Shown: positions 9,301 through 57,300 of the stretch, in pieces
Position numbering within the stretch: the first letter of the stretch is position 1
How the letters are laid out: each line of letters opens with the position of its first letter
Made by a program: the position numbers and the translations under genes
Assembly (NCBI GenBank): GCA_977030845.1
Contig: OZ365117.1
Location: forward strand, 3,038,001-3,102,000
Origin: Fimbriosthenelais zetlandica
Lineage: Eukaryota
Length of the DNA: 64,000 bases
Reading direction: 5' to 3'
Notes under the pieces: generated by a model
The model's database searches: none
What the model saw: only the letters and a program-made list of their open reading frames with translations
What the model was told of the DNA's origin: nothing

Positions 9301-12300
9301 TACTTACATTTTAATATGTAAAATGTAAGAGTTATATGTCTATAACAATTCCCCAAGCAGTATTGACCCTGTTTCGTGCAGTATTCCTATAACAATTCCC
9401 CAAGCAGTATCAACCTTGTTTCGTGCAGTATTCCTATAACAATTCCCCAAGCAGTATCGACCCTTTTTCGTGCAGTATCCTTATAACAATTCCCCAAGCA
9501 GTATCAACCTTGTTTCGTGCAGTATTCCTATAACAATTCCCCAAGCAGTATCGACCCTTTTTCGTGCAGTATCCTTATAACAATTCCCCAAGCAGTATCA
9601 ACCTTGTTTCGTGCAGTATTCCTATAACAATTCCCCAAGCAGTATCGACCCTGTTTCGTGCAGTATCCTTATAACAATTCCCCAAGCAGTATCAACCCTG
9701 TTTCGTGCAGTATCCTTATAACAATTCCCCAAGCAGTATCAACCCTGTTTAGTGCAGTATCCTTATAACAATTCCCCAAGCAGTATCAACCCTGTTTCGT
9801 GCAGTATCCTTATAACAATTCCCCAAGCAGTATCGACCCTTTTTCGTGCAGTATTCCTATAACAACTCACCAAGCAGTATCGACTTACATTTTAATATGT
9901 AGCATAACACTAGCATAAAACCACTATTTGTCCAAAAGAATATTTATGCTAGTCTCGATAGAAGATATACCCAGTTATGCCAGAAACATAGGCCATAGTT
10001 CAGAGACATCCTACAATATTATGGAACTAAAAATGAGGAAAAAGGAAGCAAATTTGCAAAACTTCCGTTATCTTTACAACAGAATACCATTTTTAATATT
10101 TACCAAATGGATCTTTGGCTACGATTGTGATGGGTTCACATGGGTCACCGACACCCGCGGCGTTCTCAGCGCAGACCCTGAACTTGTATTCTACACCTTC
10201 TTCAAGGTCATCCATGGCGAGTTGAAGGTCAGTGACTGGTGTCTTGTTGACCCTCGACCAGCGGGTACTATAGGCCGCCATACGTTCTACATAATAACCT
10301 GTCACTGGTGAGCCTCCGTCAAACTCAGGTGGTGACCACGTGAGGCGAGTGGACGTCTTGGTCGTGTCGTTGGCCTTCAGGTTGATGGGAGGACCAGGCT
10401 TGTCTGTAGATGATTGAAAACTTCATTAAACTTTCACATTCCAGTTAATTTGACATATAGACATTTTTCGAATCGGTCATCATGTTTTGAAGGTAAAGAT
10501 AAGAGTCCAATTTGGGGTTGAAGATGTTTCTTCTGACTAATGACATGCCTCAATGTGTTTCTCATAAGGTATCAACTATGTTTGCTAGACATGTAGAGAA
10601 AATGCCAGTCCTTCTGACAAATCATAGTCAGATATTTCCAGTTCTAAGCAACTACAGGTTTGTGTTGTAACTGAATCGGAGAATTGTGAACTAAAATGAA
10701 AGGTAGTGGAACATGGGTAAAATAAATGGTATGAATCTACCTAAATCCAAGCTACAATTAATTATGGTGAAAAAGTATTTCCATTCTGGATTACTTTTTC
10801 CTAAAAGCTGCGCTGGAATAAATAAAAAGGTTAAGGGACAAAATTGTAAAAATTCATGGAGAGATGAAGCGAAATAAAATAGTTCATGTAAGGAATACAA
10901 CTAAATAGTGATTGGATCCATATGGCAAGGTGATAACAAAATTGGTTTAAACAAATTAATAAAATAATTGGAGCTAACTATCTCCAGGTAAATTTAACAA
11001 AATTGGATTAAATTTAACAAATAATTGGATATATCTCCAATATTTCCAGGTGAATGCTAGATGAATAAAAAAATAAATAAGCCTGATGAAGAAGAATTAA
11101 AATCGTTGGTATTTCTGATTAGTAAGCGAAAATAAAAAATAACGTTCGGATATATAAATACCATCTCCGACTACTTACCCATTCCGTCTACACCTACTAG
11201 AAATACACATAGAAAATACACAGTCAGACACATTCATCTAATGACACGAAATACACTTAAACATACAACATAACTGAATAATTAAAATAAATAATTACCA
11301 AATGGAAGTTTAGCCGTGACTGGTTGCTCCATTTCGCAAGCATCACTAACTCCGATGGCATTTTCAGCCTTGACCCGGAAGTAGTACTGATGCCCCTCGT
11401 GGAGTTTATCAGCTTTGATGGTTCGCGTCTGTCCGTCTGTCTCTCCCACCTTGACCCAGGTGTTTTTGGCCGCGTCCCGTTTCTCGATGATGTAGTTTGT
11501 GATGGGTTCTCCACCGTCAGTTTCAGGTTCGTCCCAGACCACTACGATGAAGTCCTTGGAGTACTCGGTGGACCGGAGGTTTCTCGGAGGCGAGGGGCGA
11601 TCTGAGCAAGAGGAAGATTGTGATAGACATCCAGCCATGAAGACGATAATCAGCAAAGAAGTAGGTATTATATTTGGTATCACATTATGTAATTGCTTTG
11701 TTTTCTTGTATTGTTTTCTTAATACAATTATGCACATATAAGTACTAATAATGTGCTATGAAAATGGCACTGTAGTACTAAGTAGAAAACTGTAGTTAAA
11801 TTCTTGCCTTGGCTACCACTATATGGTATGAACATCTCCAGGACAATACATAAATACTCTAGAAAATAAACATAAATATCAAAGGAATCTTACCTTTGAC
11901 CTCAACTGTGAATTGTGCTGAGTCACTGCCCACTTCATTGGTGGCAGTAATGGTGTAGGTACCCGCCATCTTGAATGTAGCATCGACCAAGGTCACCTTG
12001 CTGGTACGGTGGTTGGTCTCAACATACACGTTATCCATACCTTCTACAGGCGCGTCGTTCAGCGTCCATTCAGCAGTCGGGCTAGGTACGCCATCTATCT
12101 TAGTGTCAATGATGGACTTCTGACCTCCTTTTAGGCTGATAACTTTCTTCAAGTCATCAGAATAGGTGATGGTAGGTGCAACTAGAATGGAAGTGATTCC
12201 TTGCATTTATTACACATCAAAACTTGCAGTATTCCTATAAGTATAACAATTCCCCAAGCAGTATCGACCCTGTTTCGTGCAGTATTCTTATAACAATTCC

Positions 12301-45300: not shown

Positions 45301-48300
45301 CCTTTTCAGCTTCCTTCTTTTCCTTCCAGGTCATAGCCTTCTTTTCCTTAGGAGACTCTGGCTTTTCCTCTTCCTTTGGTTTCTCCTCTTGTGGGGTTTC
45401 CACCTCTTTAGGTTTCTCAGGCTCCTTAGGCTTTTCAGCAGCTTTGGCCTTTTCAGCTTCTTTCTTTTCCTTCCAGGTCATAGCTTTCTTTTCCTTGGGA
45501 GATTCTGGCTTTTCCTCTTCCTTTGGTTTCTCCTCTTGTGGGGTTTCCACCTCTTTAGGTTTCTCAGGCTCCTTAGCCTTTTCTGCTTTGGCCTTTTCAG
45601 CTTCCTTCTTTTCCTTCCAGGTCATAGCTTTCTTTTCCTTAGGAGATTCTGGCTTTTCCTCTTCCTTTGGTTTCTCCTCTTCTGGGGTTTCCACCTCTTT
45701 AGGTTTCTCAGGCTCCTTAGGCTTTTCAGCAGCTTTGGCCTTTTCAGCTTCTTTCTTTTCCTTCCAGGTCATAGCTTTCTTTTCCTTAGGAGATTCTGGC
45801 TTTTCCTCTTCCTTTGGTTTCTCCTCTTGTGGGGTTTCCACCTCTTTGGGTTTCTCAGGTTCCTTAGCCTTTTCTGCTTTGGCCTTTTCAGCCTCCTTCC
45901 TTTCCTTCCAGGTCATAGGTTTCTTTTCCTTAGGAGATTCTGGCTTTTCCTCTTCCTTTGGTTTCTCCTCTTCTGGGGTTTCCACCTGTGTGGGTTTCTC
46001 AGGCTCCTTTGGCGTTTCAGCAGCTTTGGCCTTTTCAGCTTCTTTCTTTTCCTTCCAGGTCATAGCTTTCTTTTCCTTAGGAGACTCGTCTTTTTTTGGA
46101 ACTGGAACATCTTTAGCCTCGGCCATGGCCAATGTAGTCTCGTCTGGCTCTTGAACCGTAGCGGTTTCTGACACAACTGGTGAATCTACCTTAGTCGTTT
46201 CCTCTTCAGGCATAGTCAGTTCAAGGGCAGCGACCCCAGACAGAGACTTTGGCTCCTGGACAGGCTTTTTAGGTTCCTTGGGTTCTGCCTTTTTGGGCTC
46301 CTTGGGTTCTGCCTTTTTGGGCTCCTTTGCCTTGACATCTTCAACCTCTTCTACAGGAGCAACTGCCATGACAGCTTCTTTGACTTGTTGTTCAGGTTGA
46401 GCTTCAACCTTGGGCTTTTCCTCTGTTTTTGGTACATCCTTGGCTTCGACTGATACAACTTCAGTGGCAGGGACTTCCTCAATGACAGGGGATTCTTCAG
46501 GAGTGACAGGGATTTCTGCAATACGGTGCAACAGGATGTCAACATATACAACCACCACCAATCTATCGTGACAGTATAAACTGAAGGGCTCGGGAAAGTG
46601 TGTTTGGTGGTGCAAACATGCCCACAAAAATATATTGTAAAACACATTTCCACCTTGCCTTGGGGTGATTATGTCCAGAGGCAAAGCCCCTTCAGTTATA
46701 CCCTTAGCCGCCTATAGGACAGCTTAGCACATGCGTCACCCATGCAGGTTTGGCTTATACTTACCATGCATTATTTAGCAGCATTAATATACTACCTACT
46801 CACTTGCAGCCATATGAATAAACCTATTATGTGAATAGGATGCTTACCTGAAATATAAAATAAGAAGAACCATGCTTTTATTATATAATCAAAATAAAAA
46901 TTTAACTGAAAGATACACCTTGGAAGCCTTTGTTTTATATCTAGATAAGAATTACAAAATGAAAGAGATCATCAACAAAAGTAAAGATATAGAAAATGTA
47001 GAAACGTATCACAGCCATAACAACTGAACTTTCTGTATAACAAAGCAGGACAGAATGACAGTTGAAGCAAACAAAATTAGACATAAACAAAGGGGAGGAG
47101 GGGTTAGGAGGAATTCATGAATGTGGACATGAATTGGCACATGTCATGAATGATAAGTGATGCCTTGAAATGGGGAGAGCAGAGGGTATGTCTATCTGAT
47201 CATGAACTAGATCTAAGTGCAGTAAATAATGAACGATATTCGCTCAAACACTGTCCATTATTTAACAATGTTTGGTTAGAGAGAACGGACTAACCAACAT
47301 AACACAATGAATTCATGAATCATAAAAGTGATTCATGTCACATTGCGATACAAATATTTTATCCTGAGAGACAAATATATAAAAAATATATATTATTATA
47401 TATATTTTTCTTCCTAATATTCCTATATATTACTTCGTGGAATGATATTCAATTCAATTCAATCAACTATCTTGATTGAATTGATGATATTTTGGTTGAA
47501 AATATATCAGAATTTCAGAGCTAATAGTTACATGCCTATGGATAAGATATATGTCATGCTTCATACCCTTAAGTTCGAGTTTGGCCTCGGTTTTACACGA
47601 GCCAACTGTTGCAGAATATTCTGACACTTCTTTCGGGGTAGCATCTTTGATGATAAGTCTATGTACCAGTCCCTCTTTGACAATCTGAATGTTTTTGCCA
47701 GTGCCTTTGAGCTGTTTTCCAGCCTTGAACCACGTGACTTCAGCGTCAGGTTTGTTCACGTGACATTCAAACACGACCTCTGTATGCTCAGGCACAGATT
47801 TGTCAGTTAGGGGGACAGTGAATTCAAGAGGCTGGTCTGGAAGTAGGGACACAAATAGGTAGGTAAACACATGGGTTGTGGATATAAGGGATAGGTTCAA
47901 ATCGAATTATATCTACCTTTACTATCATTTACTATCATGATACTTTCTAAACAATTGTAACTGACTAAATCGATGAAAACCTAAAAGATCCCGTACCCTT
48001 CACATCGAGTTTAGCCTTTGTTTTAGAGGTACCAACTGTCGCTGAATACTCTGAAATATCTTTGGCAGTAGCATCTTTGATGATAAGTCTATGTACCAGT
48101 CCATCTTTGACAATTTGAATGTTTTTGCCAGTGCCTTTCAGCTGTTTGCCAGCCTTGAACCACTTTACTTCAGCGTCAGGTTTGTTTACTTCACATTCAA
48201 GCACGGCTTCAGTTTTTTCAGGGACTGTTTTGTCAGTTAAGGGGACAGTGAATTCGGCAGGTTTTTCTGGAATGGGAGACACATGGCGGAAGTCACAAAA

Positions 48301-51300
48301 TGAACTAAAAAAAATCAACATGATAAAAGTAAAGATGTAGAAAAAGTGCAGACACATTCTTAACTGATAAAATAGCGTGAAATATGCTTACGGAGATGTA
48401 GAAATGAAATGCATTTAAGAAAGAAAATGGACCTTTATATCAAGATGCAGAACAGAGTTTCAAGAAATATTTTTACAGAGAAAGTTAAGAATAATCATAG
48501 GAGGTTCCTGGTACTTACTGGTGACAATGTATCAGTTTCTCAATATAGAAAACTGGAAGGAATCTTAGATTATATGATGGAATATTCTCAATGTGTGCTT
48601 CGGGTATTTTCAATGTTAATGGTGGATGAAAAGGATGATATAGAACTCAACAGAAACCTTCATACTTCAGAGAATTTGTATCAATGTCCAAAACTTCAAA
48701 TGTCAGGAAGGGTCTGTTTGAGTTCATTGGACATGAGTGAGTGAAAAAGATGAATAAATGTGATGTTGGGCTTTCAAAATGTGATGTGGACGCCATCTGG
48801 TCATCAGCTAAAATTGAAAAAGAAATCTAACAGATGTTAGTTCCTGAAAGAGAAGCTTATGTCATAAATACGTAAAAAAGGATGTGAAAATCTTACCTGT
48901 TACCGTCAGTTTACATGATGTTTTGTTCAGGTCGTCCAGGACACAGTGGTATTTGTCCATGTCAGTCATCTGCGCTTTTTTGATGACGAGTTTGCGGAAT
49001 GTCTTATCCACGACCATTTCATAATCCTTGCCAGGAGTAAGAGGCTGGTCTCCTTTATACCATGTCACAGTGGCTTCAGGCTTGTTCACCTCGCACTTCA
49101 ACACTGCCTCCGTCCCTTCTGGTACTGTCACGTCCTTCAGAGGTGTAATGAATTTATACAGTGAAGCTGGAAAGAGAATGACATACATAAGGACCTATAA
49201 TTTATTTTATTTCTCGAAAAGTTTGTAAGAAAATCGGGCACAGAAACGTAATGAGAGGTTTCCTTATACTGGTGGAAACAGAAGAAATCCATCCTTCATC
49301 CCAAATAAATTAAACTTTATCTGTATTAAATTAAAATTTGATATCAAAGGTACTGAAATTGTCCATTAAATTAAGCATGTAATCATATATGATAATTCTT
49401 GCGGGTGGGGATTTTAATTGAAAATAAAATCATACATTTTATAACCTTTTTGTATAACTCACAAATAAAACATAACAAATGAACCAAAGAGTAGTGAACC
49501 AAATAAAACATAACATAAAGCTGCTTTCCAACTAAAAATTAAGCAACATAAATAAATAAAGTGAAAGAACACATGAGTCCTTGGTTTGTTTATAAGTAGA
49601 CAGACCTACCTTGTGAATTGTCGACCACAGTGACATAAGCATCTAATGATCTATGAGCAGCACGACATACATATTCCCCTTCGTCTGTCTCATCAACATC
49701 ATGCACAATCAAGACATGCACAGTCTCGTCACACACAAACGTATACTTATCACAGTTCTCCTTGGTTAGTTCTAGACCATCAAGGAACCATACAGTCTCA
49801 GCATTGTCTTTAGACAGTTCAACAGTTAAAGCGAAGTCAGAACCTTCAGTGACGTCCTTATCATACAAAGGACGGAGGAAATACAGCTCCTCATCAGGCT
49901 CAAAACGAGGGTCATCAGCAAAGTCCGGCATATCGTCTCCAACACTTAAGCTTGATGCATATTTCTGAAGTGGGATTTTCTGTCTATTTCTGTCCAGTAG
50001 TGGACCATCGACATCAGTGGGTGTCAAGCTTCTTGGCTGAGGGCTCGGAGTTAGAACATGGCAGCTGGATGGCGAGGAGTCCACCTCACACTCAACATCT
50101 TTATAAAATTTTAATTTTATTAAATCCTGGAATTTACTTAGCTTTAGCAGTATGTATAATTATAAGTACTTGTATGATAAAATGTGTTTCATGAAATCCA
50201 CCTATTTATCTTTTAATGTCAGTAATCTATGAAATGTTAAGAGATAATTATGTAAAAGTATAAGACTTAAACTTAGAATCTTATACTATGTTCTTATACT
50301 ATTGTTATATTGACGCATTGCCTTCCGTCTGTGTCCACTATTCATCACTTATCCAACTTAAGTATCTTAAGTCTAAGGTCTTCAATAAATGCAGAATAAG
50401 TCCAACTAGGTGTAGTTGATATTTAAAAAGTAAAATTATTTGTATTAAATTAAACATGCTTTTTCATATTATTTTTTATTTCATAACCTTATCAATATAC
50501 ATAAGCTTAGCTCGAAGTTAATTAAGTAATCTATTTATGTTAGTGTTTCCTAATTATAGATTCTTTTGGACGTCCTGTGAATCAAGTGTTCTTCAATATC
50601 ATGGTGAATACAAGGCTTATATGATAACTGTATCTTGCTTTAGTTGTTGCTTGACATGAATGGGTACAATGGCACCGCTTACAATAATCTAAAAGTGTGT
50701 TAATAAATAGTGCAAATGGCTTACATTGGTGCAACAAACATCGACTTATAAATATGGAAGCAGACTTAGCTAAAAGTGTGTGCACAATATACAAGTGCAA
50801 GTACTAACAAGGTGCATTACCACCTACCCACAGTCATCAATATTTACCTTTCCTGAATGGCTGAACTTTAAGAACTGATTTACTGTTCTCTGCCTCTTCT
50901 CTAGCTAGTTCTGCTGGCAGAGACTCAGCGCTTTTAGATTGTATATATTTCATAGCTCTCTGTTTGATACGATTAGCAGTACTGCCCGTTTTACCATTAC
51001 CACCTGAAGAACCGGAGTACTTACTCAAACTTTCAACCGAACCAGAAAACCTGGATTTCATGGGATGACCTGAAGGACTGGAGTACTTACTCAAACTTTC
51101 AACCGAACCAGAAAATCTTGATTTCATCGGATGCCTCTCCTGCTTGCCAGGAGAAATTGATCTAGATCGTTTTGATATTTGTTCAAATAAGTTCATAAAA
51201 CTTGGAAGTTTATCTTCATTTCCAGGATCTCTGCGATGTTCTCGTCCTCGAGTCACAGTAGCCATGAACTTTTCATCTTCTTCCTTGATCGTTCTAGGAA

Positions 51301-54300
51301 TCCTATCCGGCTCTATGGATATGACACTTTCAGAGAAGTCTCTGGACCTTTGGGCAGCACCAAATTCTTTCCTATTTGGTAAGAAGAAACCTGGCTTTGT
51401 CGGTGAGGAGGGCAGTTTATGGGCAGGAGGTGCTGAATCTGGACTCAGCAAAGAAACTGCTTTGTCAAGGACAGTTCCCAAGGGCAAGAGAACGCCTCCT
51501 GTAGCAAGGGTCTGAGCATCTTCTGATATAGTCTTAATGTCTAGGATGTCCTTCACTCTCCTTCCCTTTGTACTTTCTACCTCTGTTTTTAATACTTTTG
51601 TATGTACCTTCCCTTTATAAACTGGCCTGTCTGGAAGTATTTTCTCAATTGCTTTCACCCTTTCATTTCCTCTTAGTCCTAACTTAGAAATTTCAGAGGA
51701 TGCAGCACTTTCAATATTACCAAGTTTCCGACCCATATAACCCAATTGTGAAGGTGGAGGAGAAATATTCTGAGCCCTCATAAGACTAGCCTCAGTGGAG
51801 TGAGTGAAATATTGTATTGGCCTCTGACCTACAATAAAAACATCATCCGTTTCCTCAACATCCTCTGTTTCTACTTCAATAGTTTCTTCGTTTTCTTCCA
51901 CCACCAGAGAGTCAGTATTCTGATGGCTTAGTTCTTTGTTCAGAGTATCTGTTATAGCACTTGTGTTATAATGCGAGACAGAATCGTTTTGTGACAATTT
52001 TTGTGACAATTCTACATCCTGGTCTGATTCAACTGGACCTGCTACTTCAAAAGATGGGGTGTCAAGGTTTGGTAACAACTCGCCAGTAATATCAGATAGA
52101 GAGTCGTTTAAATGTGAACATTCCTCTATCAAATCGACCTCTTTAATGTCTCCATCAGCATTCCCCTTGCTTACATTGAGCTCTACTGCGGCACTTTCTG
52201 CCTCAACAGAAAGTTGAGCACCAAGTTGAACACCTTCTTGTAAGTAAATCTGTTCAGTTTCTTGTACTATATTTTGTTCCACATGCTCAGATACAGTTTC
52301 TTCCTTAATTGGGAAACTCGTGGACCCTTTTTCAGTTAGCACTTTTGATACTACTCTCACGCTTGACATTTCGACCTTTTCACAATTTGAATCATCTTTG
52401 TCCTCCACAAAATCATCAACTTCTGCACTGCTAATTGATTCAGATTTCCACTGAACTTGGCTTGGTATTGAAAGGCTAGCATCTTCCCTTTGTTCTGAGT
52501 CAGTCATTCTCTCACCACCTAAATGGTAGAGTGTTCTACTGACTTTACTCTCACACATTGTTGGTGTGATATTCAACACACTTATGAATTCAGATGAAAG
52601 TGTACATCTCCCCAACTTCTGACTGTCACCCATAGCTAGATCTTGTGATGAACTTTCATCTACATCTACCTGACCCTTCTCATCACTACCAGACAAAGAC
52701 CTTCTCTGGAAACTTGTATAATGTGGACATATTTCCACCTGGACCTTGTTGCCTTCTTGAGAGACAGAGTACAGTTGACAATTAGATACATGATCCACTT
52801 GATCATCACATCTTTTACAGAAAAAACTTGTCACTGGTTTCGCAATCAGTTTCCTGGTGCCCTCGATATGTGTGACTTGGACTACCTTTGTGTCACTCGT
52901 TGGGACGTCCAAGAGAAAGAGAGACGCTGCAGCTTCATCAACACTTGGAGACGCCATGACATCATCAGTACCATGTAGGGTCATGACCACATAAGGTTTA
53001 CTTTCATGAACACTTCTCTCTGGTGTTATCATTGAGGAGTCAAAATTGTACAGCTGGGCAAAGTTCTTCCCATTGCTTAACTTCTTAGTTTTCAAAAAGT
53101 TATCAACTTCTTTTGGTGAGACACCAATCATTTCCAGTGAAATGACTTCTTTCTCAACAAGTTCAACTCCCAATTTTTCAATATCTGATAGAAGTGCCCC
53201 ATTTTTTGCGCTCAGCTGATCTTCCTGGAGTTCTGCTTTGGTACTGACATGAATTATCTCCGGCTTAAGTTCCTCAGACTCAAGATGGGAGCCAGAGATG
53301 GACATGTCCTGATTATCTTTAAGAAATTCATCAAATTCGGATACAGATGACATTTTTAATGGAGGAGTGAAAGCCTCAGATGTGAGGCTTGAATCAAAGA
53401 CTTCATAATCTGATGACAGATCAGCTAGATTTTCCACAGCTTTTGGTCTGCGAGCCACAAACCCCATATAATCACTGTCACCTGATTCCTCCAGTAGGTT
53501 CTCCAGGGAGGATTTGAAGCTGACAGAGAGTGTCCTATGACCGGCTTCCTCCTCGCTTACTGAACCACTAGGTTCACTCATCTCCTCAATAGTAGACTGG
53601 CGCCGTAGACCAACACCAATAATCCGACTATGAAGTTCTTGTTTGGGTGATTCATACATTGGTAGTGAGACTGATGGGTCAGGGGCGTCCTCAGAACCAC
53701 TAGCTTGGTGTTCCCATTCATCCCCTGATGAAGAATCAGATTCAGAATCTGTTGAATCTTCCGAAAGTTCAAGAGTCTCAATAGACTCATTAATAATACC
53801 ATCAGAAGAGGAGGTACTGTTACATGAACGTCCTGAACTGGTATGTTCAGATAAGAGAGAAATATCTTCATCAGAGGGGGACTGTAAATCGTTATCATCA
53901 TTGACATTGGAGGTGTCTTTAACATATCTGAGACATGACATATCATTGAGCATTGACAGTTCTTGTGGTGAATTTATTGGTGATTTGGTTGCTTGAAGGC
54001 TTGACTCAGATGGACACAGCTCTGGTAATTTGTCAATCATCACACTTCCCTCTAGCTCGGCCAGGTTTTCTTCTTCATTCTCATTGGTACTTTCTGGGGT
54101 AGTGGAAAGTGCCTGGTCATCAGAGGGTTCTGTTGTTTGGTAAATAAGACAAAATATTCCTGTCAGTTTCCTTTCAGAAGGAGAGCCGAGATATTAGTTG
54201 ACCTTCACCACTGGGTAGTAGATTGTTAGTATGTTTACCAAGTTGTGATATGGACAACTTCATCCAATAGTCACTGCAGTGAGTGTCGAAATATGTTTGT

Positions 54301-57300
54301 TTTCTGACTCTTCTGTATTCCTGAGTCCTAATACCAGTAAGCGTAGTAAGAAGTGTTAGAGCAGAATTGAAAAGACCATCAACCTCTATTTGTCATTCAG
54401 TCAAGTGTATAAGCGATGGAGTGTGAAGTTGCCTTCAGAAGGGCTAATGCCTTGCCAGGATAGGCAGGATTATTTTATGACTATTCTGGGTTAACTGGCA
54501 GGATAGGTGTTTTAGTGAGTATTATGGGGCTAACTATAATCCATTTATCAAGACATGACCTATCTATAGTTATCTTACGTTTTGTTTTAAAATGTATGAA
54601 TTGGATTTCGTCCATATGCACTTAAAACTTGACTTAATACTTATTTCCGCAATTCAACCTTAAGCTAGATTGCCTTAAGTTTATATAGTTTATGTTGAGT
54701 CGTGCTCACCTTCAACCGTTAACGTAGCGCTTGCTTCTACTGTCCCTGACCTTACAGTGTACAATCCTTCATCAAAACCTGTAGCACCATTTATACGGAG
54801 ACAGCGAGTGGCGCCTGCCGACACAATCTCATACTTCTCACTCTCAAAGATCTCAATGCCATCAATATACCATACCACAGCGGTGTGTGGCGGGTGTACC
54901 TGACAGGTGAACGCTGCTACTGACTCACCTGGTATACAGGTGTTTACTGGGGAGGTAACAAAGTGAGGGACATCACCTGTAGAAAAACATGCACACACGT
55001 CTAGTAAAGATTAATAATATCAACATCTACATCTGGATATTCTAAACATGCAGCATCACAGAGAAACAATCCAGATATGAACACTATTGTTAGTGGGTAC
55101 TAAATGTTCATGAGTTCAATTAATACCGAGTTTTTTGTCTACATTTCCACACAAAATCCCTTACCTTGACAGTATAGTTCGGCCATATTTTCTTAATTCA
55201 TTGTGAACATAACTGAGAAATTTGCTTGCAATGGCATTTCAAAATAATTCAAAAATAATCAAACAAAATAAAAATAAAATGACATGCTTGTAACTTACAG
55301 CATTCATGAAAAAAATAAAATGTGAATACCATTCAAAATATTAAAGTCAGATTGATTGCCGATGAACTAAACAGATTCAAAAACCGAGGATTCCGTCCCT
55401 TGACAAAGTCAGGACCTTACCTGCTTTTTCAACAGTGAGTTTAGCAGTTGTTTTAATGTTCCTCGTTTTACAAGAAACATCTCCAGTGTCCTTTAGAAGG
55501 GCGTCCTTGATGATCAGTTTGTGGATACAACCCTCATGGACAAACTCATAACGATCAGACGGCTTGAGTTCCACATTTTTCATGAACCATTTTACCTTGA
55601 AATCTTCATCATTGAGTTCACAGGTAAGGGTTGCTGTGGTATGCTCTGGGGTCGTTACGTCATTGAGTTTGCCCACGAATTCAGGTACGAGCGCTGTAAA
55701 TAATGGTCATTATCATTATAAGAGGTTTCTATACAAAAGATCTCCCATAGAGCAGTCACTCTAAAGGGAATGGATAGAGTGGTCATTGGTAGGGAAATTG
55801 GAGCCTTAGTTGTTATTGACAGGTTGTATTTCAGAATCAGATGGGGCAATTCACTTCAAAAAGGATTGGAAATTATATTAAGAAACTCATATCTAGTCAT
55901 TAGATATATAATTATGTATTAGACAGTTTGAAAATGTTATTAGACAGTAAAGGTTTCATTTACAAGATTTAAAATGAAGTCATATTCTCATAAAAGAAAA
56001 TATTTTTCATTTTGAGATATAGTTGATAGAAATACTGAGATAGAATGATAGATTCACTACACGGCATACTGGTATAAAGGAGTGAGCATGGAATAGGAAT
56101 CAATCTATCTGAAGGCATACACAGCATGGTGTGTTTGCTTCTAGATAGATTTTCCCCGTTCGGCACATGGCCATTTGGAGAGCTCTAAAAGTGTAGCAGA
56201 AAACACGAATCGGTCAGAATGAGCCTGAGACAACCTCAGATAACCAAATCTATGTTTTAGCCACAGCAAAAACGCCAACCAAATCCATAGGCAGAACGGA
56301 CCAACGTTTCTCTCTAAGCTGCTGGAATTTGGTACAGTGAAAAACATTTGCACTCACGTTCAACAAACAGCTTGGCGGTCGTCACAGATTTCCTGAATGT
56401 TGCCTTCACTACACCCTCATCTTCTGGTCTGGCTACGTTGATACACAGCTTGTGGTGCATGTCTTCAGCAAAGACTTGGTACTTGGGTCCGGGAACAACT
56501 GGTTCATCCTTAACAAACCAGTCAACTGGGATCTTCTTATGTGTGACATCACATTCAAAGATGCCATTCTCCTTTTCACGGATATGTTGGTCCTCAAGTT
56601 CTTTGGTGAATCCGAACTGTTGACAGACATAAGATACCATACATGGTAATTCATCAACAAAACAAACAACTAATCTGAATTGATTACAAGATGGCAATCT
56701 GGAACATGTCAAAATAAAAACGAACCTTGGCCTTTCCGATGTTGAGTTTCTTCGGTTCTTCTTCAGGACCTTCTGGACCCTTTGGTTGCCTCTGATAGGC
56801 TCCCTTCTCCTCCTCGGCTTCAACAGGCTCTTCAGCAGGTTTCTTCTCGGGAGATTTCCTCTTTAGGAGATCAATTTTGTCACGTTTTCTGAGTTCAAAG
56901 CCAACACGCTCTCGTTCCTCTTCGACAACTTCGGCTTTCACTTCAACCAAGGCTTCTGGTTCAGGGCGTTCAACCTTCCGCAGCTTGAACTGCAGACCTT
57001 CGTCTTCACCATCTTTAGCTGAGGCTTTACCCTTCTTCAGTTTACCCCAGTCTACATCATCATCACCTTCACCCTTCTCAAATGAAGCCCTAGAAATGGA
57101 ATTTGTAACATTCAAAAGAATGACTGGCTCTGGAACAGATTTCAATTAGCTCTTGATGTTTGCTCCACTGAGACATGCCCATAAAATCGACCAAGCTACG
57201 AGCAGTGCTTAATTTTAACTCAAAAAGATACAGTGACTAGCGAAAAATCCTTACGTTTCTTTGAGGGCAGCCTTCCAGTCCTCTGCTTCCTCTGCGTTCT

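What the first reader, a model, noticed from the sequence alone, without database searches (positions are those of the whole stretch)
49610..55212. Self-contained cassette: start exon, atypical Ig, 1,093-aa unique exon, acidic Ig
Seen: a 48-nt intronic exon with TAA two codons before a strong-context ATG (AATATGG) encodes MAELYCQ in frame with Ig 54710-54976. Next come the giant disordered exon and an exon with a unique segment plus an acidic Ig. All three are phase 1-1 and compositionally unlike the Lys-rich neighbours. Established: vertebrate cardiac N2B is an Ig-unique-Ig cassette acting as a spring and signalling hub, but it lies upstream of N2A. Inference: either an N2B-analogous optional spring placed downstream of the N2A-like element, or the N-terminus of a separate internally initiated protein. 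If spliced after 55421 the 48-nt exon terminates titin.
Basis: partly seen in the sequence, partly recalled or inferred. Interest (0 to 1): 0.8.

Follow-up and report, generated by a model that had tools for sequence, protein, structure and literature searches.

The report
Titin-like unique exon, doubtful start exon
Three real coding exons of a giant titin-like muscle gene, one a 1,093-residue floppy segment kept in the same place in a second species, are ordinary in-line parts of the protein's elastic region, and the proposed 48-base internal start exon has no support beyond a good splice donor.

Summary
The sequence features are all present at the stated coordinates on the minus strand. The Ig exon (54976-54710), the 3,282-nt unique exon (54129-50848) and the unique+Ig exon (50098-49610) are real coding exons, all phase 1-1. 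The giant frame is open where about 73 stops are expected. Its only relative among 1.84 billion representatives is a 1,440-aa ORF on an ENA contig. That ORF shares three collinear islands and the same gene layout: three Ig ORFs, a giant unique ORF, a long Ig-containing ORF, then an Ig tandem. AlphaFold2 gives mean pLDDT 29, consistent with disorder.

I found no homology to vertebrate N2B unique sequence. The element lies after the N2A-like block, not before it. The first Ig reads better as the last, I83-like Ig of that block.

The 48-nt "start exon" has a strong donor and a strong-context ATG. Against it, the acceptor is poor, a short upstream ORF sits just ahead of the ATG, and it could not be tested for conservation or transcription. 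Comparable intronic look-alikes occur elsewhere in the window. Most likely it is a chance pseudo-exon.

Verdict: a lineage-restricted titin I-band unique-sequence spring or docking element. The self-contained cassette and internal-start readings are unsupported.

The parts
55421..55693 (-). Upstream Ig exon (273 nt, phase 1-1), I82-like
   Evidence: Pfam I-set E 2e-11. Best PDB match is 7ahs_A residues 94-179, E 2.6e-30. 7AHS is the human titin N2A I81-I83 tandem.
55165..55212 (-). 48-nt AG..GT intronic segment with TAA, then AATATGG start (MAELYCQ) and donor CAAG|gtaagg; candidate start or poison exon, probably a pseudo-exon
   Evidence: Sequence read. Donor 10.2 bits, acceptor 0.9 bits. Chance estimate. 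Single copy in the window, no repeats in the intron.
54710..54976 (-). Divergent acidic Ig exon (267 nt, phase 1-1), positional equivalent of I83
   Evidence: Pfam I-set E 4.7e-10 over the full profile, residues 3-87. pI 4.67, Lys 1.1%. Lowest similarity to the other Igs of the window. PDB matches: cMyBP-C 3.3e-19, titin 5jdd 2e-17, 7ahs residues 191-255 1e-14.
50848..54129 (-). Giant unique exon, 3,282 nt, 1,093 residues, Ser/Glu/Asp-rich, predicted disordered (alternative in-phase acceptor at 54093)
   Evidence: Open frame P about 1e-33. Acceptor 6.05 bits, donor 9.65 bits. No Pfam hit. One homologue, P0001, E 7.4e-12. AlphaFold2 mean pLDDT 29.2.
53387..53890 (-). Conserved island 1 (residues 80-247): SSGDEW, RRQSTIEE (the only [RK]RxS/T site in the exon), RPKAVENLADLSSDYEVF
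   Evidence: BLASTP 37% identity over 186 columns against P0001 residues 92-273. tblastn. Motif count.
52697..52819 (-). Conserved island 2 (residues 437-477): CxxC ... VE[IL]CPHY, possible small zinc-binding beta element
   Evidence: 46% identity over 41 residues to P0001 residues 632-672. AlphaFold2 places beta hairpins here, but at low confidence, pLDDT about 44.
50921..50977 (-). Conserved island 3 (residues 1051-1069): AN.IKQRAM.YI basic segment
   Evidence: Collinear third BLASTP segment, E 0.014. tblastn.
51002..51133 (-). In-frame 66-nt tandem duplication (HPMKSRFSGSVESLSKYS.. twice) inside the giant exon
   Evidence: Tandem Repeats Finder: period 66, 2.0 copies, 92% match. Translation.
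49610..50098 (-). Exon with a 70-residue Pro/Ser/Asp-rich unique segment followed by an acidic divergent Ig (489 nt, phase 1-1)
   Evidence: Pfam I-set residues 72-148, E 4.7e-08. pI 4.16. The only usable in-phase acceptor scores -0.78 bits; donor 11.5 bits. A 241-aa I-set ORF sits in the same relative position in the second species.
48897..49166 (-). Next Lys-rich tandem Ig exon; start of the ordinary Ig run that leads to the PEVK-like exons
   Evidence: Pfam I-set E 2.1e-17. Lys 14.6%.

Best explanation
The region is an in-line stretch of the elastic (I-band-type) part of a titin-like gene on the minus strand.

A divergent acidic Ig (54976-54710) closes an N2A-like Ig block. A single 3.28-kb exon then encodes a 1,093-residue intrinsically disordered, Ser/Glu/Asp-rich unique sequence. 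Next comes an exon with a 70-residue Pro/Ser/Asp linker plus a second acidic, divergent Ig. The chain then continues into ordinary Lys-rich tandem Igs and two E/K/P-rich PEVK-like giant exons.

Shown here: the exons are coding and in frame, the unique exon is predicted disordered, and its position between the Ig exons is shared with a second species.

Inferred: the unique sequence acts as an additional entropic spring in series with the PEVK-like springs. Fully extended it would measure about 415 nm at 0.38 nm per residue.

Also inferred: its three conserved islands are docking or regulatory sites. They are an RRQSTIEE basophilic-kinase-type site with an AVENLAxLSSD motif, a CxxC...CPHY candidate zinc knuckle, and a basic IKQRAMxYI segment. 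In that sense it would work like vertebrate N2B/N2A unique sequences without being related to them.

The 48-nt segment at 55212-55165 is most likely a chance intronic pseudo-exon and not a start exon.
For: Exon reality:
- Pfam I-set hits in both flanking Ig exons.
- Zero stops in the giant frame against 73 expected.
- In-phase splice sites scoring 6.05 and 9.65 bits.
- Manual phase check.

Conservation:
- A HMMER search of 1.84 billion representatives returned a single hit, P0001, at E 7.4e-12.
- P0001 shares three collinear islands with the giant exon.
- P0001 lies on a 529-kb ENA contig after three same-strand I-set ORFs.
- Downstream of it come more unique ORFs, then a 241-aa I-set ORF, then an Ig run.

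Disorder:
- AlphaFold2 mean pLDDT 29.2 with no residue above 70.
- 15% Ser, net charge -81, no Pfam hit.

Context:
- The upstream Ig best matches I82 of 7AHS at 2.6e-30.
- Ig2 matches the I83 part of the same chain at 1e-14.
- I83 is described as the most acidic and structurally atypical N2A Ig.
- PEVK-like exons with about 24% K, 27% E and 12% P follow downstream.

Against the start exon:
- Acceptor 0.9 bits, below all 39 training acceptors.
- Two upstream in-frame ATGs form a short upstream ORF that ends 6 nt before the proposed ATG.
- Intronic look-alikes occur elsewhere in the window.
Against: - No transcript data could be examined, so constitutive versus alternative use of any of these exons is unknown.
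- The disorder call rests on a two-sequence alignment, which often gives low pLDDT regardless.
- The spring and docking roles are inference from composition and from three conserved islands in a single pairwise comparison.
- The donor at 55165 is strong. Only about 4 comparable donors unattached to recognisable exons exist in roughly 40 kb of intron.
- The full donor+ATG+context pattern is expected only 0.13 times per window in shuffles, so a real start or poison exon is not excluded.
- A real exon here (50098) also has a very weak acceptor, so a weak acceptor alone does not disqualify the 48-nt segment.
- The assignment of Ig2 to I83 is weak. Its best PDB hits are cMyBP-C and another titin Ig, and another upstream Ig also aligns best to the I83 part of 7AHS.
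Confidence: 0.68

Rival explanations
1. Optional N2B-like spring cassette. The three exons (or the giant exon alone) are included only in some muscles or stages, and are skipped by 55421>49166 or 54710>49166 splicing to tune stiffness.
For: All exons are phase 1-1, so skipping keeps the frame. The acceptor of exon 50098 is very weak at -0.78 bits, and those of Ig2 and the giant exon (about 6 bits) are below the gene's mean of 11.4. Weak sites are common in regulated exons. Both flanking Igs are divergent from the tandem Igs.
Against: Phase 1-1 holds for nearly every exon of this gene, so it is not evidence of a cassette. The layout is conserved in a second species as part of the continuous gene. 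No transcript evidence is available.
Confidence: 0.2
2. Internal (Cronos-like) transcription start. The 48-nt segment is an alternative first exon, giving a protein that begins MAELYCQ-GDVPHF and runs through the cassette into the rest of titin.
For: Donor 10.2 bits. ATG with A at -3 and G at +4, in frame with the next exon, with a stop just upstream. The pattern is expected 0.13 times per window in shuffles. A first exon needs no acceptor.
Against: Two upstream ATGs (55210, 55201) form the short ORF MFTMN-stop immediately before the proposed ATG. A transcript would therefore carry an inhibitory upstream ORF or have a leader of 12 nt or less. No TATA-like or CpG-rich feature is seen in the 200 nt upstream (by eye). 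Real introns here hold more donor-like sites than shuffles, 6 against 1.1. No conservation test was possible, because the second species' DNA is not retrievable.
Confidence: 0.08
3. Terminating isoform, Novex-3-like. Either the 48-nt segment is included after 55421 as a stop-carrying cassette exon, or the giant exon's donor is read through (…RKGKY-stop) with polyadenylation in the next intron. Both give a short titin that lacks the A-band part.
For: Inclusion after 55421 reads V-M-F-T-M-N-stop. A stop lies two codons past the giant exon's donor, and AATAAA/ATTAAA signals lie at 50480, 50217, 50121 and 50115 in the following intron.
Against: The acceptor of the 48-nt segment scores 0.9 bits. 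A stop shortly after a phase-1 donor, and AATAAA in a 67% A+T intron, are both expected by chance. The giant exon's donor is strong at 9.65 bits.
Confidence: 0.06
4. The giant open frame is a separate nested, intronless gene that lies inside a titin intron on the same strand.
For: It has no Pfam domain and no similarity to other titin parts. The related ORF in the second species was called as a stand-alone protein.
Against: In-phase acceptor and donor sit just inside both ends of the open frame, and the donor lies two codons before the stop. The frame is open upstream of the first Met. The same position between Ig exons on the same strand is seen in two species. The stand-alone call in the second species is only a prokaryote-style ORF call.
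Confidence: 0.03

Closest known systems
Vertebrate titin N2B element (I23-N2Bus1-I24-N2Bus2-I25-N2Bus3-I26; mouse exon 49), as reviewed in PMC8553726
   Same: A long disordered unique sequence flanked by Ig domains within the extensible I-band part. The exon is frame-preserving. There is at least one conserved basophilic-kinase-type site (RRQS), and N2Bus3 is regulated by PKA, PKG, ERK2 and CaMKII phosphorylation. A spring-plus-hub role is therefore plausible.
   Different: No detectable sequence similarity. The element lies after the N2A-like block, whereas N2B lies on the Z-disc side of N2A. It is split over three exons. The unique part is about twice as long (the 572-residue size of N2Bus is from memory). 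Tissue-specific inclusion and partner binding are untested.
Vertebrate titin N2A element (I80-N2Aus-I81-I82-I83, followed by PEVK); I81-I83 crystal structure 7AHS, PMC8042602
   Same: The Ig just upstream (55693-55421) matches I82 best of all PDB chains, at E 2.6e-30. The next Ig (54976-54710) is acidic and divergent, as I83 is described, and aligns to the I83 part of 7AHS at 1e-14. In both proteins a long disordered elastic segment follows this Ig.
   Different: What follows here is a Ser/Glu/Asp-rich non-repetitive unique sequence, not PEVK. The PEVK-like exons come three and seven Ig exons further on. The one-to-one correspondence of the Igs is not clean.
Cronos titin (internal promoter in the distal Ig region) and Novex-3 (alternative terminal exon), mentioned in PMC8553726
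   Different: There is no promoter, transcript, poly(A) or conservation evidence here. The candidate start has a short upstream ORF and the candidate terminating exon has a poor acceptor.
P0001/P0002 locus on ENA assembly ERZ26222911 (unnamed, uncharacterised ORFs on a 529-kb contig)
   Same: This is the only sequence relative. It shares three collinear islands and the same Ig-Ig-Ig / giant unique / long Ig-containing ORF / Ig tandem layout.
   Different: The unique region there is far longer (1,440 + 2,157 + 603 aa of adjacent ORFs). It carries an expanded array of about 22- and 50-residue repeats that has no counterpart in this window. Its DNA could not be retrieved.

Membership tests
Immunoglobulin I-set domain (Pfam PF07679) | Profile match above the gathering score for the two flanking Igs | tested here: met
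   39.8 bits for 54974-54711 and 33.4 bits for exon 50096-49611, against a cutoff of 23.7.
Titin N2B element | Ig, long unique sequence, Ig architecture within the I-band region | tested here: met
   Ig 54976-54710, a 1,093-residue unique exon, then a 70-residue unique segment plus an Ig.
Titin N2B element | Sequence homology of the unique part to N2Bus | tested here: not met
   phmmer against 1.84 billion representatives gave one hit only, an unnamed 1,440-aa ORF. The word-based search and the Atlas search gave nothing. Caveat: I could not verify that vertebrate titins are among the representatives.
Titin N2B element | Position on the Z-disc side of N2A (N-terminal to it) | tested here: not met
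   The element lies downstream of the I82-like Ig and the N2A-like block. The N2B position is described.
Titin N2B element | Tissue-specific inclusion; binding of FHL1/2 and alphaB-crystallin; stiffness tuned by PKA, PKG, ERK2 and CaMKII phosphorylation | not testable with these tools
   Only one conserved RRxS site was seen. Phospho-motif counts are not above composition-matched shuffles, apart from a slight S/T-P excess of 16 against 10.7 +/- 2.9.
Titin N2A element | Ig domains matching I81-I82-I83 in order, ending just before the elastic disordered region | tested here: inconclusive
   The I82 match is strong. The I83 match of Ig2 is weaker than its matches to cMyBP-C and another titin Ig. 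The Ig at 56622 also aligns best to the I83 part.
PEVK region | Pro/Glu/Val/Lys-rich repetitive modules | tested here: not met
   The giant exon has P 4.8%, K 6.2% and S 15.3%, and its only repeat is one 22-residue duplication. The exons at 46515 and 41447 do fit, with about 24% K, 27% E and 12% P.
Alternative first exon (Cronos-type internal start) | Start codon in frame with the downstream exon through a usable donor | tested here: met
   ATG at 55186 and donor after 55165 at 10.2 bits, phase 1, in frame with 54976.
Alternative first exon (Cronos-type internal start) | Promoter activity, transcript 5' ends, or conservation of the exon in relatives | not testable with these tools
   No transcript collection gave a hit. 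The metagenome scan was empty.
Novex-3-type alternative terminal exon | Stop codon and poly(A) signal used within or just after the exon | tested here: inconclusive
   A stop lies two codons after the donor, and the first AATAAA/ATTAAA lies about 360 nt downstream in an A+T-rich intron. Both are expected by chance.

The most novel reading that the evidence does not exclude
This non-vertebrate-style titin evolved its own N2B-like regulatory spring placed directly after an N2A-like hub. It would be built around a conserved CxxC...CPHY zinc knuckle and an RRQS phospho-switch. The strong donor plus ATG at 55186-55165 would mark an internal promoter that makes a Cronos-like protein beginning at this element.
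Probability: 0.08. Interest if true: 0.65.

Novelty: new variant of a known kind. Interest (0 to 1): 0.33.

Why it matters
Titin's unique sequences (N2B, N2A) are where vertebrate muscle tunes stiffness and docks signalling proteins. How such elements arise outside vertebrates is poorly known.

Here a long disordered unique exon sits right after an N2A-like Ig block. It is kept in position in a second, distantly related species. Only three short islands are conserved, which is the pattern expected of a disordered spring carrying linear motifs.

This gives concrete, testable sites: S178 in RRQSTIEE, the Cys437/Cys440/Cys467/His469 cluster, and the IKQRAMKYI segment. These could be used to ask whether spring-plus-hub elements evolved independently in titin-like proteins. 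The more striking claim of an internal start would matter more, but it is not supported.

Tried and rejected
- Word-indexed protein search of the giant exon and of the Ig exon, hoping for transcript-derived fragments that show the upstream junction: no hits. Candidates are limited to 0.55-1.75 times the query length, so full-length titin entries could not appear.
- Search with P0001 for further relatives: only its neighbour P0002 was returned, because of shared repeats. P0002 has no similarity to the window.
- ESM Atlas look-alikes of the giant exon: scores were 0.56 or lower, generic disordered proteins, and I rejected them. Atlas on an Fn3 exon to learn the taxon: uninformative.
- JGI metagenome scan with the two-sequence alignment: 600 pattern matches, none confirmed.
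- DNA of the second species' contig: not retrievable. The orthologous intron could therefore not be checked for the 48-nt segment.
- AlphaFold2 of the whole exon and of the CxxC...CPHY island: low confidence. I ran no fold search because matches to such models are meaningless.
- The sigma-70 promoter scan does not apply to a eukaryotic gene and I disregarded it.
- Repeat and copy search of the 48-nt segment and its intron: single copy, so it is not a transposon fragment.
- An alternative better-scoring acceptor for exon 4 at 50064 (6.8 bits) was rejected because it is out of phase with the only good donor of the giant exon.
- Phospho-motif enrichment in the giant exon: not above shuffles.
- The organism could not be identified.

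Full report
**What is there**

The whole window is one titin-like gene on the minus strand. It runs from tandem Ig exons, through two E/K/P-rich giant exons, into Ig/Fn3 super-repeats.

I confirmed by direct reading:
- An Ig exon ending at 55421 (…GAA AAA GCA G|gtaagg).
- A 48-nt AG..GT segment at 55212-55165.
- An Ig exon at 54976-54710.
- A 3,282-nt exon at 54129-50848, with a second in-phase acceptor at 54093.
- A 489-nt exon at 50098-49610.
- The next Ig exon at 49166-48897.

All are phase 1-1, but so is almost every Ig or Fn3 exon of this gene. The phase therefore does not set the three exons apart.

**Are the exons real?**

- Pfam finds I-set domains in the two flanking Ig exons and nothing in the giant exon.
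- The giant frame has no stop where 73 are expected from its base composition (P about 1e-33). The other five frames have 33-132 stops.
- I trained a splice model on 39 clear exons of the window.

| Site | Acceptor (bits) | Donor (bits) |
|---|---|---|
| Training mean | 11.4 (sd 3.2, min 4.1) | 9.6 |
| Giant exon | 6.05 | 9.65 |
| Ig2 (54976-54710) | 5.98 | 8.85 |
| Exon 4 (50098-49610) | -0.78 | 11.5 |

- Exon 4's acceptor at 50098 is the only usable in-phase AG ahead of its Ig.

**Composition**

| Element | pI | Notable content |
|---|---|---|
| Ig2 | 4.67 | 1.1% Lys |
| Giant exon | n/a | 15.3% Ser, 10.9% Glu, net charge -81 |
| Exon 4 | 4.16 | acidic |
| Adjacent Igs | n/a | 13-15% Lys |

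- The N-terminal ~800 residues of the giant exon are acidic and the last ~290 are basic.
- Three Igs between the PEVK-like exons are equally acidic.
- Ig2 and the exon-4 Ig are the most divergent Igs in the window. Their median score to the others is 34-38 bits, against 45-56 for typical tandem Igs.

**Relatives**

- The word-indexed search found nothing for the giant exon or for Ig2.
- The exhaustive HMMER search of 1.84 billion representatives found exactly one protein, P0001. It is a 1,440-aa ORF called on a 529-kb contig of ENA assembly ERZ26222911, at E 7.4e-12.
- The similarity is confined to three collinear islands:
  - Residues 80-247: SSGDEW, RRQSTIEE, RPKAVENLADLSSDYEVF.
  - Residues 437-477: CKRC…VEICPHY.
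  - Residues 1051-1069: ANRIKQRAMKYI.
- The gene table around P0001 shows the following on one strand:
  - two short ORFs with no family,
  - three I-set ORFs,
  - P0001,
  - two further unique ORFs of 2,157 and 603 aa,
  - a 241-aa ORF with an I-set domain, unusually long like exon 4 here,
  - a run of ordinary Ig ORFs.
- The arrangement Ig block / giant unique / long unique+Ig / Ig tandem is therefore shared by two species.
- The extra ORF P0002 is an array of ~22- and ~50-residue repeats with no counterpart in this window.
- The DNA of that contig could not be retrieved, and a JGI metagenome scan found no further relative.

**Structure**

- AlphaFold2 on the two-sequence alignment gives mean pLDDT 29.2 with no residue above 70.
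- A separate run on the CxxC…CPHY island gives pLDDT 43.6 with beta hairpins.
- This agrees with disorder, but a shallow alignment weakens the inference. The zinc-knuckle idea rests only on the conserved Cys437, Cys440, Cys467 and His469.

**Context**

- The Ig just upstream (55693-55421) matches residues 94-179 of 7ahs_A better than any other PDB chain, at E 2.6e-30.
- 7AHS is the human titin N2A I81-I83 tandem, so this is the I82 position.
- Ig2 aligns to residues 191-255 (I83) at 1e-14. Its best hits, however, are the last Ig of cardiac MyBP-C and a titin chain, 5jdd. From memory, not verified here, 5jdd is the I9-I11 tandem.
- I83 is described as the most acidic N2A Ig, with atypical loops, lying directly before the PEVK spring.
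- Ig2 is thus better read as the last Ig of the N2A-like block than as the first part of a separate cassette.
- The domain-by-domain correspondence is not clean, since the Ig at 56622 also aligns best to the I83 part.

**The 48-nt segment**

- The donor (CAAG|gtaagg) scores 10.2 bits and is good.
- The acceptor scores 0.9 bits, below all 39 training acceptors. A first exon would not need it.
- Candidates with a donor of 10 bits or more, an in-frame ATG and an A/G(-3)…G(+4) context were counted across 58 introns (37 kb). They number 2 observed against 0.13 expected in Markov shuffles.
- The other case (donor at 11179) encodes only the initiator Met. Without the context rule there are 6 observed against 1.1 expected, partly real exons missed by my mask.
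- Two upstream ATGs in the same frame form MFTMN-stop, ending 6 nt before the proposed ATG. A transcript starting upstream would carry a short upstream ORF, and one starting downstream of them would have a leader of 12 nt or less.
- The segment is single copy and not part of a repeat.
- Nothing allowed a test of conservation or transcription.
- I rate it a probable chance pseudo-exon: about 8% for a real start exon and about 6% for a terminating exon or isoform.

**How it most likely works**

Shown: a divergent acidic Ig, a 1,093-residue predicted-disordered segment, a 70-residue Pro/Ser/Asp linker and a second acidic Ig are translated in line with the rest of the titin-like chain. They lie between an N2A-like block and the PEVK-like springs.

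Inferred: the unique segment is an entropic spring in series with the PEVK-like exons. It makes up about a third of the 3,357 disordered residues counted here (1,093 + 70 + 598 + 1,596).

Also inferred: the three conserved islands are binding or regulatory sites. RRQS is the only [RK]RxS/T site in the exon and it lies in the best conserved island.

This works like N2B/N2A unique sequences. It fails the membership tests for N2B on homology, position and exon structure.

**Novelty**

This is a lineage-restricted variant of a known kind, namely titin I-band unique-sequence elements. It is of moderate interest to titin specialists. The internal-start idea is unsupported.

Noticed in passing
window 60135-59848 and 23989-23672 (minus-strand frames, in introns): Two copies of a Pro-rich open frame (…QSFSGTEPTP.PPLPT.SS.HSGVTSK.P.YIVH.TSPP…) lie in different introns of the titin-like gene. 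This is probably a dispersed repeat or transposon remnant.
   Followed up: no
window 48266-47997 and 47836-47567: Two adjacent Ig exons are 81% identical at the protein level, far above any other Ig pair in the window. This points to a recent tandem exon duplication.
   Followed up: partly
window 8634-5705 versus 3424-1411: Successive Ig-Ig-Fn3-Fn3-Fn3 exon sets are near-identical in their exon peptides. For example, the exon starting EPINFLTPLEDQEV and the one starting PPSFNLDNFEEVRTLKVGQATIIELPFSAH each occur twice. This indicates a very recent duplication of a super-repeat unit.
   Followed up: no
window 17454-17185: Open frames in two phases made of a short tandem repeat (…VTGVTLSQHHLTLFLSLFAPA… repeated). 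This is a tandem DNA repeat in an intron, between the last I-band Ig and the first A-band-type exon.
   Followed up: no
window 50098 (acceptor of the unique+Ig exon): This clearly real exon has a very A-rich, poor acceptor (aaaattaaaattttataaag, -0.78 bits) directly after the 3.3-kb exon. That could indicate regulated inclusion or an unusual branch-point arrangement.
   Followed up: partly
P0002 (ORF adjacent to P0001 on ENA ERZ26222911 contig): In the second species the unique region continues into a 2,157-aa array of ~22-residue (KQVVEKERPIVHSQFDKTET) and ~50-residue (…LTPERSIETPLLELLHLTRVKPEESG…) modules. The array includes a partial duplicate of P0001's tail. It looks like a lineage-specific elastic repeat expansion.
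   Followed up: partly
window 11182-11179 and 46771-46765 (minus strand): Other strong intronic donor-like sites are preceded by an in-frame ATG (donors at 11.4 and 12.6 bits). They show that start-exon look-alikes recur in this gene's introns.
   Followed up: partly
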